Shown here piece after piece: positions 16,923 to 23,143 of a stretch of DNA of 64,000 nucleotides. The stretch lies in NCBI GenBank assembly GCA_964106645.2, contig OZ067042.1; one strand, written 5' to 3'. The translations under genes and the position numbers were made by a program. The notes below the pieces were generated by a model. It was not told where the DNA came from, did no database searches, and worked only from the letters and a program-made list of their open reading frames with translations. How positions within the stretch are numbered: position 1 is the first letter of the stretch; every line of letters starts with the position of its first letter. Origin of the DNA: Podarcis pityusensis (lineage: Eukaryota).

Positions 16923-19714
16923 TGAAGCAGAACAGCTTAGAAAGAAAGAAAAGGCTCTACTGGTTTATAAATCTGTAACTTTTAAAATATATTCTTCCCT
17001 CCACTCAACATGATAAACTTCCCAAAGCTCTGTGATCCAGATAACTCCCCCTCCCCATTTCACAGATGTTTCCCTACCCCCTAATGGAGAGTCCCTCCTG
17101 GATATCCCAAAAGAAAAAGATAGGCCTAGTAAGTGAGAGAGGTCAAACATGAGCCCAGCTATTTATTACATATACTGCAACCAGATGGAAGTAACTCATC
17201 CATCAAAGAGCTCAGCGTCCTCATCGAATTAGCTTCTTATAAAAAGCCTCCTGCTCTTCCCTCTGATCCACATGGTTCAACTTCCTTCCCTTCCATGCAC
17301 TTTTGGAAAATGAACCCTCTCTAACCCCGTTGCTGTGTTCTCCTTAAATCATCGCCGCCCATCATTCCATAGCTATATTTAAACTTTACTTTTATCAATA
17401 CTCATCCTGTAGCTGTGGGAGATATTAAAAGTGTACCAGGGCATGGAAGGGCGTTTCTGACACTTGCTCTTTCATTCATCAGCCCCCTCATAGGCCTGTT
17501 GGTGACAATGAAAAGATTTCACAATACCGGTGCAGCAGAAACTCATTCTCCTACTCATCCATCATGTTCAACCTAGCAGCAGTTCTACTGACCTAATCTG
17601 TAATGCCTCGGTGCTCACTGGAGATTTCTTAAAGGCACTCTTCATTGTTGTTAGTTACAAAGAATAAGTCTGTGCTATTAGATAAGGAGACTAAATGGTG
17701 CAAAGATTAATGCAATACTCCCTCATCACCATGACCAGGGTTCAACCACTTGGGTCGAACTGGAACGTCTGTTTTCTGAGTTTGCTGGAAGATCACATCC
17801 GACACTCACTCCCCCACCCCTGGATGAATAAAAATTTAAACCTATTTCAAGAGGTAAATAGGATTTTAGAGGTGCAAGAGCTATGTACCACCGCTAATTT
17901 ATCACTTCTGTCAGCTTTAGGGTAATATGCACTAGTTATTTTACATTATAACAAATACATTAGTCTCTTCTCTAGATAAAGGAAAAATTATGAATAAACT
18001 GTCTTGGATATTTTGATGGAGCAAAGGAATCTTCCCACTCCTTTTGCCTTCCTAGCTCTCTAGTGAATATCCAGCATCTGTAAGTGCAGGAGACATAAAC
18101 AAGGTGGGGGAGAATTAGAAATTTTGCACTTTTTTTATAAGGAGGGAAATAAAAATGGACAGCTGGCTGGATGATTTTATCATGTCAACAGTACCATAAA
18201 AGAACAATGGCAGGACATAGAATAAACAGTTGTTCTGTGCTTGTTTCTCAAAACACCACAACTTAATAGAATGACAACTTGGTAAGAACTTTGATTTTAT
18301 AAATGGTTTATTCCATGAATTCTATGTTAAAATTCCATGAATGTTGATTGCCATGGCTCACTTTGAGCACACATGAACCCTGTTCTAGATCTGAAGATCC
18401 CTTTCCACAAGTAAATGTTTCTTCAGACACGCCAATCATTCTCCTCCTCATGAAGGTCATGATGTTATATGTTTGTTTGTTTATTTATTTTTTTGTTTGT
18501 TTCCCGGTTAATTACAGCTGGGAATATGACTACTAGAACATCACTAATATAGGAATAGGTGCCAGGTTCAGAGAAGAATGGCAATGTAAGCCAGCCCAGG
18601 GCAAAGAGTTAAGTACACCTGCTATAGAGATTTGGAGAATTCTGTTGGAAGCAGAAGTGGAAATTGCAATAATACATGTTTGTCCAAAGTTCAGGAACGG
18701 AACCCATGCTAGCAAATATGACCAATATTCATTACAATTGATCTTTTAGTCCAAAAATGTGATGTAAATAATTATATTTTCTGCATTATTTATACATTTC
18801 CCTTCCATGGAAATGCATTGAAATTAACTACACAGATTACATGACTAATTATGTTAAGTTTTGGCCACAGCAGATAGCAAGTCAAACAACACAGATTGTA
18901 GCAGAAACTGAATAAGTCAGGCTTATTCTACTCATTCCTGTCAAATGCGCAAGAGTGGTGATTGTGCCACACAATTTCATAAGTTTCATGCTGTTCTGGA
19001 AGAGGAATCTCCTCATTCTCATCAACAATTGTATGTTAGTAGGAGAGAGTCCACCGTCAGGTTCTGGTGATGGACAGCTTAATCTGTCTTCTGCAGTTGA
19101 TCCATTTTACTTTGTGCCTAAGCTGTCTAACTGTCTACTGAAGATTGTTGTGTAAATGTGAGAACTGCCTTAACATAACTCAGTTGTGTGGGGTTTTTTA
19201 CAGGAAGCATGAAAGACAAAGAAGAGGCTAGCATCCTAGAAACTCACTTTTTACTGAAGATTTTCGACCAATACTGGGTGGTTACTGCCTGGAATTTTGA
19301 GGCTTCTTGATCATCGCATTCTACTTCAAAGTATATTGGACAGGATCTGCTATTCCTATTGCCATAGTTTGCATACAGATACTTAAAAAAAAAAATCTAG
19401 AATTTATCACTCAATTTTGAAATCCCAAATATCCTGGTCTCATTTTCAAAATGACCGCTCCCCGCTTAAAACGGGGGGCCCCCTTTGCGTGGACGCGTGC
19501 AGCCCCTAGGTCTGGAGCGGCTCCAACAGCATAGGCTTGGTTTGCCTTCCCTCAGGTGGGATACCTGGAGGTCTCCGCCTACCTCAGTCAGTTGTCCAAT
19601 CCCACCTGGGGGAAGCGTTGCCAAGGAGACCAGGCCAGGTAGGGGAGGGATTACCTGCCCACACAATAGAGGGAGGATCTTACCTGGGAATCCTCACTTG
19701 GCTCCAGAGCTTCT

Positions 19715-19761
19715 GAGAGCCAGTGTGGTGTAGTGGTTAAGAGCGGTAGTCTCGTAATCTG
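19715..19761 (+). mobile_element. tRNA-derived SINE head (Squam3-like), 3'-deleted, inside the YR element
   Basis: GAGAGCCAGTGTGGTGTAGTGGTTAAGAGCGGTAGTCTCGTAATCTG with A-box TGGTGTAGTGG; it stops before a B-box and joins directly to RT sequence. Confidence 0.8.
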
Positions 19762-20514
19762 ACCAAACTCGCCACGTTGAGGGAATTGATAGCTACCATG
19801 ATGGCTCAGAAAAAGACCACGTTGTGTCAGGTCCAGACACTCTTAGGACACCTCAATTTTGCATGCAGGGTTATCTCGCCCGGTCGCGCCTTTTGCACAC
19901 GCCTAGCCCGTCTCACGGCTGGCGGTGTTGCCCCCCATCACCACATCAGGGTCACCCACACCATAAGGGAGGACCTCAAAATATGGTTGACCTTCCTGGA
20001 AAGTTACAATGGGGTGTCCTTTTGGCAAGATTGGCTGCTGCCTAAGGAACAGCTACAGGTGCACTCTGACACCTCTGGTCGCTTTGGCTTCGGTGTCTAC
20101 TTCAGGGGTCACTGGTGTGCGCAGCCTTGGCCAACATCTTGGCACGCGGAGGGCATTACACGCGATTTAACTTTTCTTGAGTTCTTCCCAATCCTAGTGG
20201 CTCTCCGGGTTTGGGGGCACCTCCTCAAGGACACCAGGGTGTGCTTCTGGTCGGACAACCAGGCAGTGGTAAGAATCATTGCGAAGCAATCTGCAAAATC
20301 CAACAGGGTAATCCGCGTGCTCCGCCTCTTCGTGCTGGAATGTCTGAAAGGTAACATCTCCTTTTCCGCACGGGTCATCCCGGGCCTCAATAACGACATT
20401 GCAGATGCCCTGTCTCACTTTCAGATGGAGCGTTTTCGCGACCTAGCACCCGAGGCCGATCAACTCCCAGAAGCCTTTCCGGAGGACCTCTGGGAAATTG
20501 GACGAGAGAAGTGA
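19762..20514 (+). pseudogene. DIRS/Ngaro-type RT C-terminal region plus RNase H (5'-truncated pol)
   Basis: KLATLREL..LLGHLNFACRVISPGRAF (RT thumb/connection); RNase H acidic motifs HSDTSG, FLEFFPI, WSDNQAVV, NDIADALS. No YxDD core is present. Confidence 0.9.
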
Positions 20515-21419
20515 CAGCAGGAGTACTGAGCGCCCTTGCGCCATCAACATTGCAATCCTACACCAGAGCATGGTCCCAATTCGAGGGGTTCAGAGATAAG
20601 TTTGGTTTACGACGCAGACGTGCAGCTAAGGAGTATGATGTTCTAAAATATTTGGTTCACCTAAAGCATAGAGGCATGGCCCTTAAGACCATCAGCCTGC
20701 ACAAGGCCGCTATCTCATACTTCAGCAACTGTTTTTGGCTCCCAGACCCCTGTAACACTTTCCACGTAAGGAAGCTTATTGCCGGGTGGCGTCGCTCCCA
20801 CCCGCCCATTCCAGATAAGAGGAGGCCAGTAACCATTGAGATCCTCCGGCTGATATGGGATGCGCTCCCCAGTATTTGCTGGTCCAACTATGAGGTTAGG
20901 CTCTTCAGGGCGGCCTTCTCCCTGGCCTTCTTTGGTGCGCTCCGTATCAGAGAGTGCGTTTGGGGCACATTGTCACCTCATCGTGGGGGCTTGTCTGTGG
21001 CTGATATCAACCTTGACAGGCGCATGCTACAAGTCAAAATCCGAGCCTCCAAAACCTATCAACTAGGTAGGGGTTCCACGCTAAGTCTAGCCTCCTCCCC
21101 ACACACTGGACCATGCCCTGTCGCGGACACACGCAAATTCCTGAAAGTACGTCCTCCAGGACCAGGCCCTCTCCTCATTCATGCATCAGGCTGCCCCATG
21201 ACCCGTTGCCAATTTGTCTCAATATTGCGTAAGGCCATCCATGCTTGTGGAGGCGACCCGGCACAATTTTCCGGGCATTCTTTTCGTATTGGTGCAGCAA
21301 TCACGGCAGCTGCAAGCGGCCTCCCGGCAGAACACATAAAAGCAATGGGGCGGTGGCGTTCAGCTGCCTTCAAAGGCTACATTAGATTCAACCAGCAGAC
21401 ACTGACAGATACCATATAA
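20511..21419 (+). CDS. Tyrosine recombinase (phage-integrase family, DIRS/Ngaro type)
   Basis: Open 302-codon frame with N-terminal LAPSTLQSY..W..F domain and catalytic set R (FFGALRIRE), K (RASKT), HxxR (GHSFRIGAA), W (GRWRS), Y (FKGYIR). True start uncertain; overlaps the RNase H stop. Confidence 0.92.
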   Translation: MTAGVLSALAPSTLQSYTRAWSQFEGFRDKFGLRRRRAAKEYDVLKYLVHLKHRGMALKTISLHKAAISYFSNCFWLPDPCNTFHVRKLIAGWRRSHPPIPDKRRPVTIEILRLIWDALPSICWSNYEVRLFRAAFSLAFFGALRIRECVWGTLSPHRGGLSVADINLDRRMLQVKIRASKTYQLGRGSTLSLASSPHTGPCPVADTRKFLKVRPPGPGPLLIHASGCPMTRCQFVSILRKAIHACGGDPAQFSGHSFRIGAAITAAASGLPAEHIKAMGRWRSAAFKGYIRFNQQTLTDTI

Positions 21420-22360: not shown

Positions 22361-22363
22361 TTT

Positions 22364-22369
22364 AATAAA
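22364..22369 (+). terminator. Putative polyadenylation signal of the YR element
   Basis: AATAAA ~95 nt before the element's end, directly after the outer stem. Confidence 0.6.
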
Positions 22370-23143
22370 GTTGTGGCCAATTTAATCCCATAGCACATTG
22401 TCATGAGTCGTTATTCCACATGACGTGGGACCGCGCGGGATCTGGGGACTCCGCCTGTCCACGCAATGAAAACTATGCCTCATGCACAATTTGCTGCAAC
22501 TTTCAGTTTCAACTCGTGCACATGTGCACTGATAAAACACTGCAAAAAAGCAGTACATATTTATGTTGTCATACTGTGGATTTGTAAAATACCACACAGA
22601 AAACAATATGAATGATGGCGTCTACACATCAGCAAAACACTGCACTAAAAGAAGTCTGAGGCAACTAAATATACATGATAAATGGCTTATTGTTTTGTAA
22701 TGTTTTCATCAGTGTCCACAGATACTGTAGAGCAGGGGGAAACTTGAAGGAACTGAAAAATTAAACAACCTGTCCATGATCCATTTCTGGAATTAATTTT
22801 AATACATTCTCCTAGCTAAAACCAGAATTCAGATGAAAAACTGAACAAAAGAAAAAGTGAATGCACAGAATAAATGAATGAGGGAAATAAGCTCATCACT
22901 CTTGGGCTGGTTTGTTTGCAATTTTTTGTTGGGCGGGGAGGGGGCTGTTGCTGATAGTTTTTTGTATCTTTATTTTAGATCTTGCCTTGGTTTTTGTGGA
23001 AATTGTTCACTTGGGTTGTGTACTTTTTAATGTTTCATTTATTGCTTACAACTATTTTTGTTATGTTGCAGTTATGTATTTTTTTCATGTTGTAAGTTAC
23101 TTTGAGCATGGTTTGAACTATGGAAAGGTGACATACAAATAAA

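What the first reader, a model, noticed from the sequence alone, without database searches (positions are those of the whole stretch)
19455..22464. Squamate YR retrotransposon carrying an SGNH esterase, with termini that fit neither classic Ngaro nor DIRS
Seen: RNase H, YR and SGNH hydrolase in tandem, with YR (R-K-HxxR-W-Y) and SGNH (S-G-N-DxxH) catalytic residues present. Established: an extra hydrolase ORF is known from Ngaro-type elements, which have split direct repeats, whereas DIRS1-type elements have ITRs plus an internal complementary region. Seen: no long direct repeat between the two ends or within the 3' region of this copy, but short inverted repeats and heavily folded UTRs. Inference: this may be a distinct subgroup with its own replication signals. 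Caveat: the internal deletion could have removed a repeat unit.
Basis: partly seen in the sequence, partly recalled or inferred. Interest (0 to 1): 0.85.

Follow-up and report, generated by a model that had tools for sequence, protein, structure and literature searches.

The report
Deleted lizard Ngaro retrotransposon copy
This is a broken, internally deleted copy of an already known kind of jumping gene (a Ngaro-type tyrosine-recombinase retrotransposon with an extra esterase gene) in a wall-lizard-like genome, and its odd ends are best explained by lost pieces, not by a new type of element.

Summary
At window 19450-22466 (+) lie a GC-rich 5' block, an RT-C-terminus/RNase H ORF, a tyrosine recombinase (YR) ORF and an SGNH esterase ORF with catalytic residues present. 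This copy has no long direct repeat, and it has a 41-nt imperfect terminal inverted repeat.

The interpretation, a new subgroup with its own termini, is not supported. Related elements in Podarcis, Lacerta, Eublepharis, Anolis and Xenopus have the same gene order. Six of them carry classic Ngaro split direct repeats (A1...B1-A2-spacer-B2, 94-100% identical). The window's 5' start and 3' end are homologous to their A start and B end. Its YR groups with the lacertid elements (support 99).

The window copy is A - deletion with SINE filler - RH - YR - SGNH - one B. It lacks gag, RT and the A2-spacer-B2 module. Two other copies of the same family (Podarcis lilfordi) have the same termini, other deletions and also one B. 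One Podarcis muralis copy of a canonical family is single-B too.

No full-length copy of the window's own family was found, so ancestral split repeats are inferred, not shown.

By-products: a junction hairpin kept across seven families, a poly(A) signal in every B, and an esterase closest to a LINE ORF1 esterase.

The parts
19450..19710 (+). 'A' repeat, single copy, 261 bp. It is the 5' terminus of the element and starts AATGACCGCTCC.
   Evidence: The start is defined by two other copies at other loci, L005 and L006. The motifs CCGCTCC...TTGCG(G)TGGAC are shared with the A1 start of Lacerta L003. Its length is within the 161-262 bp A repeats of relatives.
19457..19479 (+). Inner hairpin at the 5' end of A (CGCTCCCCGC...GGGGGGC).
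   Evidence: MFE folds of A nt 1-35 and of the inferred junction. A hairpin sits at the same place, with a different sequence, in all seven families.
19485..19525 (+). 5' arm of the terminal inverted repeat. It pairs with the last 41 nt of B.
   Evidence: the repeat finder I1, 41 nt, 71% complementary. Duplex -57.5 kcal/mol, against 0 of 200 shuffles and 0 of 85 internal windows.
19711..19776 (+). Deletion junction. It replaces the 5' UTR, gag-like ORF and RT. It holds about 8 nt of unknown origin, a 43-nt SINE-head filler (19719-19761), then the run-in to the RH frame.
   Evidence: Homology with L005 stops at 19710. 19719-19761 is 98% identical to L003:14094-14136 and 97% to L005:7219-7248, the head of a repeat. 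Relatives have about 4.3-4.8 kb between the A end and this point of the RT/RH ORF.
19777..20514 (+). C-terminal part of the RT/RNase H ORF: thumb/connection plus RNase H. The RT fingers and palm are deleted.
   Evidence: 58-61% identical to the end of ORF2 of L001 and L003. AF2 model pLDDT 85 matches retroelement RT C-termini and RNase HI. D98, E135 and D160 are invariant.
20511..21419 (+). Tyrosine recombinase ORF, 302 aa. The frame is open from 20394 and has no ATG near the N-terminus.
   Evidence: Pfam integrase and SAM-like domains. 196 homologues, the best 51% identical in Podarcis and Lacerta. The catalytic R-K-HxxR-W-Y residues are invariant. Start-codon check.
21420..21962 (+). SGNH esterase ORF. 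It is in the same frame as YR, after the YR stop codon, and is cut short by a premature stop at 21960-21962.
   Evidence: Pfam Lipase_GDSL_2. 88-92% identical to the L005 and L006 ORFs, which run 22 codons further. Its fold is SGNH; the best solved relative is 4c1b, the LINE ZfL2-1 ORF1 esterase.
22069..22466 (+). 'B' repeat, single copy, 398 bp. It is the 3' terminus and ends GTCCACGCAA.
   Evidence: The end is defined by L005 and L006. The start is inferred from the GTGGCGGT motif shared with the B starts of L001, L003 and L004. 22326-22382 is 80% identical to both B1 and B2 of L001. Relatives' B repeats are 279-449 bp.
22364..22369 (+). AATAAA poly(A) signal inside B, 97 nt before the element's end.
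   Evidence: AATAAA lies 76-121 nt before the end of every B repeat in all 11 B copies checked, and is the only AATAAA/ATTAAA hexamer in 10 of them.
22426..22466 (+). 3' arm of the terminal inverted repeat.

Best explanation
Window 19450-22466 is a dead, internally deleted copy of a Ngaro-like tyrosine-recombinase retrotransposon (order DIRS) of lacertid lizards.

A full-length relative reads: A1, 5' region, gag-like ORF, RT/RNase H, YR, SGNH esterase, B1, A2, spacer, B2. This copy keeps:
- A;
- the last third of the RT/RH ORF;
- YR;
- SGNH;
- one B.

It has lost two things:
- the 5' region, gag and RT, replaced by a short filler that includes a SINE head;
- the A2-spacer-B2 module.

How the parent element works, partly inferred:
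- Transcription starts inside A (not shown here). It ends about 20 nt after the AATAAA in B2, so the RNA lacks both outer ends.
- The internal B1|A2 junction carries those ends and lets reverse transcription rebuild a circle.
- The YR inserts the circle at the B|A junction, which shares only 2-5 bases with the target.
- The B end, and A from about nt 31-45 on, form a conserved long stem around a small hairpin at that junction. This probably marks the recombination or circle-closing site.
- The esterase is an accessory protein related to the membrane-binding esterase of CR1/L2 LINE ORF1 proteins.

With a single B and no internal junction, this copy could not restore its ends even if transcribed.

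The single B most likely arose by unequal recombination, or by a template switch, between B1 and B2, in the way solo LTRs form.
For: Shown:
- The gene order RH-YR-SGNH, with 40-61% protein identity, recurs in L001-L004 and L008.
- Split direct repeats are 98.8-100% identical in L001, L003, L004, L007a and L007b, and 94-99.5% in Xenopus L008.
- L003's ORF2 has an RT domain and no room for a methyltransferase. Its ORF1 has a zinc-finger hit.
- The window's 5' start and 3' end match A starts and B ends motif by motif. The middle of B is 80% identical to Podarcis B1 and B2.
- Two more copies of the same family share exactly these termini at unrelated loci, and each carries one A and one B.
- L002, of the same family as canonical L001, is also single-B with complete ends.
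- The YR tree places the window with the Lacerta and Podarcis elements (SH-aLRT 99). Eublepharis, Anolis and Xenopus elements with split repeats lie outside that group.
- AATAAA sits 76-121 nt before every B end.
- The junction stem plus inner hairpin is kept in seven families, with different sequences.
- SGNH dN/dS is about 0.8, there is a premature stop, and the start codons are missing.

From papers:
- Ngaro elements have the structure A1-[ORFs]-B1A2B2, and some carry an SGNH hydrolase ORF (PMC9210276, PMC7192593).
- Solo AB repeats arising by recombination have been reported in Cafeteria Ngaros (PMC8547959).
Against: - No full-length or B1-A2-B2 copy of the window's own family was recovered. 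All three copies seen are single-B, so ancestral split repeats in this family rest on phylogenetic bracketing and terminus homology.
- The nearest canonical relatives are only 48-51% identical in YR.
- If B1xB2 recombination is the cause, it must have happened independently in each of four copies.
- The internal deletions of the window copy and of L005 start at exactly the same base, the presumed A 3' boundary. L006's starts 46 nt before it. Random post-insertion deletion does not predict this.
- No transcript ends were mapped.
- No comparison with Repbase or Dfam, and no tree with named DIRS1, PAT or VIPER references, could be made.
Confidence: 0.82

Rival explanations
1. One reading: the family is a distinct YR-retrotransposon subgroup. 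Its native structure is one A and one B bounded by a short inverted repeat. It replicates without split direct repeats or an ICR.
For: All three copies of this family have one A, one B, identical complete termini and no A2. The B end pairs with A and could hold the two ends of a linear cDNA together without an internal junction copy.
Against: The same inverted repeat exists in six canonical elements with split repeats. The family is nested among such elements. All three copies are deletion derivatives evolving nearly neutrally. The poly(A) signal lies 97 nt inside B, so a single-B transcript would lose the B end and have no template to restore it. L002 shows that single-B copies arise inside a canonical family.
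Confidence: 0.08
2. Single-B copies are primary integration products, not later recombinants. Minus-strand DNA primed next to an A copy would give a unit-length A-interior-B circle. That circle carries the B1|A2 junction and integrates as A...B. Early stops or template switches in the same synthesis would give deletions that begin at the A 3' boundary.
For: The window and L005 deletions start at the same base, the presumed A 3' boundary, and L006's 46 nt before it. The right-hand breakpoints differ: in RH, at the YR tail and in SGNH. The window junction carries a 43-nt SINE-head filler, as expected from a switch to an abundant RNA. L001 and L002 are 94% alike, yet carry unrelated 1.9 kb segments starting within 7 nt of the A end. 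A conserved CCCACCC-type motif directly follows A2 in all six canonical elements. Four of ten two-ended copies are single-B with complete ends.
Against: The model cannot regenerate the spacer-B2 module that every young, intact copy carries. It would therefore have to be a dead-end side route. The sample is small and was chosen through ORFs. Older copies have simply had more time for B1xB2 recombination. No priming site was identified.
Confidence: 0.12
3. Assembly artefact: the window's assembly collapsed B1-A2-spacer-B2 into one B.
For: The window has eight runs of N, so it may come from a gapped assembly. A tandem B...B loop can be skipped by an assembler.
Against: There are no N inside the element. 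The same single-B structure occurs in three copies in chromosome-scale Podarcis assemblies (L002, L005, L006). The same assemblies resolve B1-A2-B2 elsewhere (L001).
Confidence: 0.04

Closest known systems
Ngaro-like elements with an SGNH ORF in Xenopus tropicalis (Repbase DIRS-53_XT and DIRS-54_XT, described in PMC9210276). The copy studied here is L008.
   Same: The order is RT/RH, YR, then an SGNH hydrolase ORF. There is no methyltransferase. A and B repeats lie at the termini. L008 has the B-end/A stem, the inner hairpin, AATAAA inside B and the CCCACCC motif after A2.
   Different: The window copy lacks gag, RT and A2-spacer-B2. Protein identity is only 28-44%. The host is a lacertid lizard, not a frog.
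Full-length Ngaro-like elements of lacertids and geckos found here: Podarcis muralis L001, Lacerta agilis L003, Eublepharis macularius L004.
   Same: They are the nearest relatives with complete structure. RH is 58-61%, YR 47-50% and SGNH 40-42% identical. The A start, B start and B end are homologous. The window's YR groups with the two lacertid elements; the gecko element lies outside that group.
   Different: They carry A1...B1-A2-spacer-B2 at 99-100% identity and intact gag and RT. They belong to different families from the window copy.
Solo AB repeats of Cafeteria Ngaro elements (PMC8547959) and solo LTRs.
   Same: Repeat units are lost by recombination between the element's own direct repeats.
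   Different: Here recombination would be B1xB2, which removes only A2 and the spacer and keeps the coding interior. It would not be A1xA2, which removes the interior.
DIRS1-like elements (Dictyostelium DIRS-1; PMC7192593, PMC3266345).
   Same: They share a YR, RT/RH, the circle-junction logic, insertion through a few shared bases without a classic target duplication, and inverted repeats at the ends.
   Different: DIRS1 has long ITRs that reach both ends, an ICR complementary to the termini, and a methyltransferase. Here the inverted repeat is 41 nt and imperfect. It starts 35 nt inside the 5' end, no ICR exists, and the relatives have no methyltransferase.
Esterase domain of the ORF1 protein of the zebrafish LINE ZfL2-1 (PDB 4c1b; PMC3905857).
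   Same: It is the best solved relative of the Ngaro SGNH ORF, both by profile (E=1.7e-8, next hit 1.8e-3) and by Foldseek E-value (25% identity). Both are accessory esterases of retrotransposons.
   Different: In the LINE it is a domain of ORF1p behind a coiled coil. Here it is a separate last ORF after YR. The TM-score to 4c1b is low (0.35), and the crystal structure is domain-swapped. No activity was tested here.

Membership tests
Ngaro-like (order DIRS) | Encodes a tyrosine recombinase with the R-K-HxxR-(H/W)-Y catalytic residues. | tested here: met
   R145, K181, H256, R259, W282 and Y290 are invariant in the alignment. Pfam integrase hits are present but below the curated cut-off.
Ngaro-like (order DIRS) | RT/RNase H ORF upstream of YR, with no methyltransferase domain. 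| tested here: inconclusive
   The RNase H part is present. The RT core is deleted in this copy. In relative L003 the ORF2 has RVT_1 only and ends where YR begins.
Ngaro-like (order DIRS) | Split direct repeats A1...B1-A2-B2. | tested here: not met
   This copy, and the two other copies of its family, have one A and one B. The feature is met in six related elements. Filing the copy under Ngaro therefore rests on descent, not on this copy's own structure.
Ngaro-like (order DIRS) | Termini homologous to the A start and B end of elements with split repeats. | tested here: met
   Shared motifs at the A start, B start and B end. The middle of B is 80% identical to the Podarcis B repeats. The junction stem and hairpin are shared.
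Ngaro-like (order DIRS) | Groups with Ngaro in RT/RH and YR trees that include named references. | tested here: inconclusive
   The YR groups (SH-aLRT 99) with elements that have split repeats. No named Ngaro, DIRS1, PAT or VIPER reference sequences were available.
Ngaro-like, hydrolase-bearing subgroup | Extra SGNH hydrolase ORF downstream of YR. | tested here: met
   The same arrangement occurs in L001-L004 and Xenopus L008, and is published for Xenopus (PMC9210276).
DIRS1-like | Inverted terminal repeats plus an internal region complementary to both termini (ICR). | tested here: not met
   There is only a 41-nt, 71% inverted repeat, offset 35 nt from the 5' end. No internal match to the joined ends was found on either strand.
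DIRS1-like / PAT-like | Methyltransferase domain after RT/RH. | tested here: not met
   It was not found in the relatives' ORF2. In the window copy, RH is followed directly by YR, with overlapping frames.
SGNH hydrolase fold | Blocks I, II, III and V with Ser, Gly, Asn and Asp-x-x-His, and a flavodoxin-like fold. | tested here: met
   GHS, G50, GENDL and DGVH are present. The AF2 model (pLDDT 72) matches TesA, sialate O-acetylesterase and PAF-AH with TM 0.6-0.68.

The most novel reading that the evidence does not exclude
Single-B copies whose deletions start at the A boundary may not be decay products. They could be the direct output of a second replication route of Ngaro elements. In that route a unit-length circle (A-interior-B) is made by priming beside an A copy and is inserted by the YR at the structured B|A junction. 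That would make the A 3' boundary, the conserved CCCACCC spacer and the junction hairpin the actual cis-acting replication signals of vertebrate Ngaros. None of these has been mapped experimentally.
Probability: 0.12. Interest if true: 0.6.

Novelty: new member of a known kind. Interest (0 to 1): 0.27.

Why it matters
For the scan, this removes a candidate 'new class' of YR retrotransposon. The element is an ordinary, decayed Ngaro-type copy, and a hydrolase-bearing Ngaro is already described.

The comparison did produce testable detail on how Ngaros may replicate, a process that has never been studied experimentally:
- a structured B|A junction kept from frogs to lizards;
- a poly(A) signal placed so that the B end is always lost from the transcript;
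- a conserved motif right after A2;
- a recurrent breakpoint at the A boundary.

It also links the Ngaro esterase to the esterase of CR1/L2 LINE ORF1 proteins. This suggests that two unrelated retrotransposon orders recruited the same accessory activity.

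Tried and rejected
- ICR or internal junction in the window copy: blastn-short of the joined ends against the element, both strands, found nothing above chance.
- Second copy, or stray A2 or B2, elsewhere in the 64 kb window: none found.
- Closer YR relatives: the best is 51% identical. The closest RH relative, P0123 (73%, Podarcis muralis), is not on record for a locus look-up.
- Full-length copy of the window's own family: not found. 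Only two further deletion derivatives turned up, via the SGNH hit.
- Scan of metagenome contigs for the inferred B|A junction 20-mer: one hit, a chance match in an unrelated GC-rich contig, L009.
- RNAalifold on a MAFFT alignment of six junctions: the families are too divergent to align, so the result was uninformative. I replaced it with per-family duplex statistics and a junction-anchored table.
- Palindromic target sites: striking at the window (TTTTCA-a-TGAAAA) and at L006 (9-bp arms), but not significant over ten insertions, p about 0.10.
- tRNA-like fold of the SINE that supplied the filler: ARAGORN found none.
- PDB sequence search with the RH ORF: no meaningful hit. The fold search worked instead.
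- Purifying selection on SGNH within the family: rejected, dN/dS about 0.8.
- A tree with named DIRS1, PAT, VIPER and Ngaro references, and a Repbase or Dfam comparison: not possible with the tools.
- A family consensus: not built (see referred steps). The DNA alignment output printed a consensus line for two 5' ends by default. It was not used.
- Human sequence: no contig was taken for human.

Full report
**1. What is there**

The flagged stretch stands out as a GC-rich island: 53% G+C against about 40% around it. Three + strand ORFs lie head to tail at 19777-20514, 20511-21419 and 21450-21962.

Pfam gives weak hits, all below the curated cut-offs, but of the expected kinds: RT_RNaseH, Phage_integrase with SAM-like N-domains, and Lipase_GDSL_2. 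Stronger tests agree with them.

- The first ORF folds with pLDDT 85. It matches the thumb/connection and RNase H portion of the CaMV, HERV-K, Ty3 and HIV reverse transcriptases. The carboxylates D98, E135 and D160 are invariant, and D210 is nearly so.
- The second ORF has the full YR catalytic set: R145, K181, H256-x-x-R259, W282 and Y290.
- The third ORF has the four SGNH blocks and an SGNH fold.

The element contains no long direct repeat, the window holds no second copy, and nothing inside matches the joined ends on either strand. The inverted repeat is real: 19485-19525 pairs with 22426-22466. The UTRs fold somewhat better than shuffled sequence, z=-2.1 and z=-3.5.

**2. Relatives**

The YR has 196 homologues. 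The best are 46-51% identical, in Podarcis muralis, Lacerta agilis and Eublepharis macularius. Anolis, frogs and mussels follow.

I fetched the loci of four of these. All carry RH, YR and SGNH in the same order, at 58-61%, 47-50% and 40-42% identity to the window.

Self-comparison shows textbook Ngaro split direct repeats in three of them:
- L001: A1 3715-3937, B1 10842-11241, A2 11238-11460, B2 11624-12025.
- L003: A1 3958-4175, B1 9548-9961, A2 9960-10177, B2 10352-10765.
- L004: A1 4121-4382, B1 9534-9982, A2 9981-10242, B2 10292-10740.

Repeat pairs in these three are 98.8-100% identical.

Three further elements have the same layout: two neighbouring ones in Anolis sagrei (L007a without SGNH, L007b with it) and one in Xenopus tropicalis (L008, with SGNH). 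The Xenopus arrangement is published for Ngaro-like DIRS-53_XT (PMC9210276). That some Ngaros carry a hydrolase is stated in PMC7192593.

L003 also has a gag-like ORF with a zinc-finger hit, and an RT ORF with no room for a methyltransferase.

**3. The window's termini are Ngaro termini**

- The 3' end, GTCCACGCAA, lines up with the B2 ends ...CGCCACGCAA, ...CGACACGCAA and ...GGCAGCAA.
- The 5' start, AATGACCGCTCC...TTGCGTGGAC, lines up with the Lacerta A1 start, AAATCCGCTCC...TTGCGGTGGAC.
- The B start motif GTGGCGGT is shared.
- Window 22326-22382 is 80% identical to both B1 and B2 of L001.

**4. The same family elsewhere**

The SGNH ORF found one close protein cluster in Podarcis lilfordi, 88% identical. 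Its two loci hold further copies of the window's family:
- L005 9546-10847 is 89-93% identical in nucleotides.
- L006 9747-10911 is 95-98% identical.

Both begin AATGACCGCTCC and end GTCCACGCAA in unrelated flanks. This fixes the window element at 19450-22466.

Both have one A and one B, and their internal deletions differ:
- In the window, A nt 261 is joined through a filler to the RH region.
- In L005, A nt 261 is joined through about 20 nt to the YR tail.
- In L006, A nt 215 is joined to the middle of SGNH.

The window's filler contains 43 nt of the head of a lacertid SINE-like repeat.

The copies are decaying. SGNH dN/dS is about 0.8. The window's SGNH ORF stops 22 codons early. No ATG stands near the start of either the YR or the SGNH frame.

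**5. Why one B**

L002 belongs to the same Podarcis muralis family as canonical L001, at 94% identity. It also has one A and one B with complete ends, and CAAAG at both borders. Single-B copies therefore arise inside a family that has canonical split repeats.

The YR tree puts the window with the Lacerta and Podarcis elements (SH-aLRT 99). The Eublepharis, Anolis and Xenopus elements with split repeats lie outside that group. By bracketing, the window family's ancestor had split repeats.

The simplest cause is unequal recombination or a template switch between the two roughly 400-bp B copies. That removes A2 and the spacer. Recombinant solo AB repeats are already reported for Cafeteria Ngaros (PMC8547959).

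I could not show this for the window's own family, because no full-length copy was found.

**6. Mechanism**

*Shown.* Every B repeat has AATAAA 76-121 nt before its end; in 10 of the 11 B copies it is the only such hexamer. A transcript ending in B2 therefore lacks the B end, and only the internal B1 can supply it.

The element ends share 2-5 bases with the junction: AA, GCAA, CAAAG. In the window, AATGA begins the element and AA|TGA spans its 3' border. The same is described for DIRS1 insertion through a short junction sequence without a target duplication (PMC3266345).

In all seven families, the last 10-45 nt of B pair with A starting at nt 31-45. The first 30-44 nt of A form their own hairpin. 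The sequences differ from family to family while the architecture stays. In most families the pairing is stronger than with shuffled sequence or with internal windows of the same element. It is weak only in the Podarcis muralis family.

*Inferred.* This structured junction is the site of circle closure or of YR recombination. A single-B copy such as the window's cannot restore its ends and is a dead end.

*The esterase.* Its best solved relative is the ORF1 esterase of the LINE ZfL2-1. The profile E-value is 1.7e-8 against 1.8e-3 for the next hit, and it also has the best Foldseek E-value. That protein binds acidic phospholipids (PMC3905857). A membrane-related accessory role is a reasonable guess, but it was not tested here.

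**7. What stays unexplained**

Two of the three deletions in the window family start at the very same base, the presumed A 3' boundary.

L001 and L002 carry unrelated 1.9 kb segments that begin within 7 nt of the A end.

All six canonical elements have a CCCACCC-type motif directly after A2.

Together these suggest that the A boundary is a template-switch point. They leave open, at low probability, that single-B copies are primary products of a side route of replication.

**8. Verdict**

- The claim of a new subgroup is not supported.
- The element is a deleted, decaying member of a known kind: a Ngaro-like element with an SGNH ORF, from a lacertid family that may be undescribed.
- No consensus of the family was built. 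That step is referred.
- The runs of N in the window were left untouched.

Noticed in passing
L001:11172-11331, L003:9892-10051, L004:9913-10072, L007:10477-10636, L007:16185-16344, L008:13424-13583; window 22426-22466 with 19450-19525: The B|A circle junction folds into an outer stem (the B end with A from nt 31-45 on) around an inner hairpin (A nt 5-30). This holds in seven families from Xenopus to lacertids. The sequences differ between families, and the insertion point sits at the base of the outer stem.
   Followed up: yes
window 22364-22369 and every B repeat of L001-L008: AATAAA lies 76-121 nt before the end of every one of the 11 B repeats checked, and is the only AATAAA/ATTAAA hexamer in 10 of them. 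The part of B that pairs with A is therefore downstream of the likely cleavage site.
   Followed up: yes
L001:11461-11623, L003:10178-10351, L004:10243-10291, L007:10801-10879, L007:16414-16568, L008:13704-13883: A unique spacer of 49-180 nt separates A2 from B2. It begins with a CCCACCC-type pyrimidine motif in all six canonical elements. Several spacers share GGTAGGAATTTTTTCC...CGCCTACC, and TCGTCACAACT just before B2.
   Followed up: partly
window 19710/19711; L005:9796/9797; L001:3938-5912 versus L002:4065-5920: The 3' boundary of A is a recurrent breakpoint. Two independent deletions start there. Two 94%-identical Podarcis muralis copies carry unrelated segments of about 1.9 kb, mostly non-coding, directly after A.
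   Followed up: partly
window 19719-19761: The deletion junction holds 43 nt of the head of a lacertid SINE-like repeat. It is 98% identical to L003:14094-14136 and 97% to L005:7219-7248.
   Followed up: yes
window 21420-21962 (protein alignment A3): The Ngaro SGNH esterase is much closer to the ORF1 esterase of the zebrafish LINE ZfL2-1 (PDB 4c1b, E=1.7e-8) than to any other solved SGNH protein (next E=1.8e-3).
   Followed up: partly
window 21417-21449: In this family YR and SGNH are in the same reading frame. Only the YR stop codon and ten codons separate them, and no ATG stands before the SGNH domain. L005 shows the same. This might mean read-through or re-initiation. A frog gene model (P0116) fuses YR and the GDSL domain.
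   Followed up: no
L007:4497-11181 and L007:11497-16971: Two different Ngaro elements lie 315 bp apart in Anolis sagrei. The first has no SGNH ORF. The second has one, with a 428-bp tandem duplication inside it (14801-15229 and 15228-15655).
   Followed up: no
L003:1619-1947: A degenerate spacer-plus-B fragment of another Ngaro family (70-75% identical) lies 2 kb upstream of the full Lacerta element. L001 and L003 also share the six bases TCAGGA just after their 3' ends. Possibly Ngaros insert near or into older copies.
   Followed up: no
window 19439-19449 with 22467-22477; L006 flanks: The reconstructed empty sites are palindromic at the window (TTTTCA-a-TGAAAA) and at L006 (TGCAATTGT...ACAATTGCA). 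Over ten insertions this is not significant (p about 0.10).
   Followed up: yes
window 62429-63823: A 464-aa ORF with no Pfam hit. Its sequence looks like the C-terminal part of a LINE ORF2, but this is from memory and was not tested.
   Followed up: no
window 55391-55639, 38058-38302, 10319-10551, 39653-39866 and others: Several copies of short interspersed repeats are shared with the Podarcis lilfordi loci at 83-97% identity. This fits a lacertid origin of the window.
   Followed up: no
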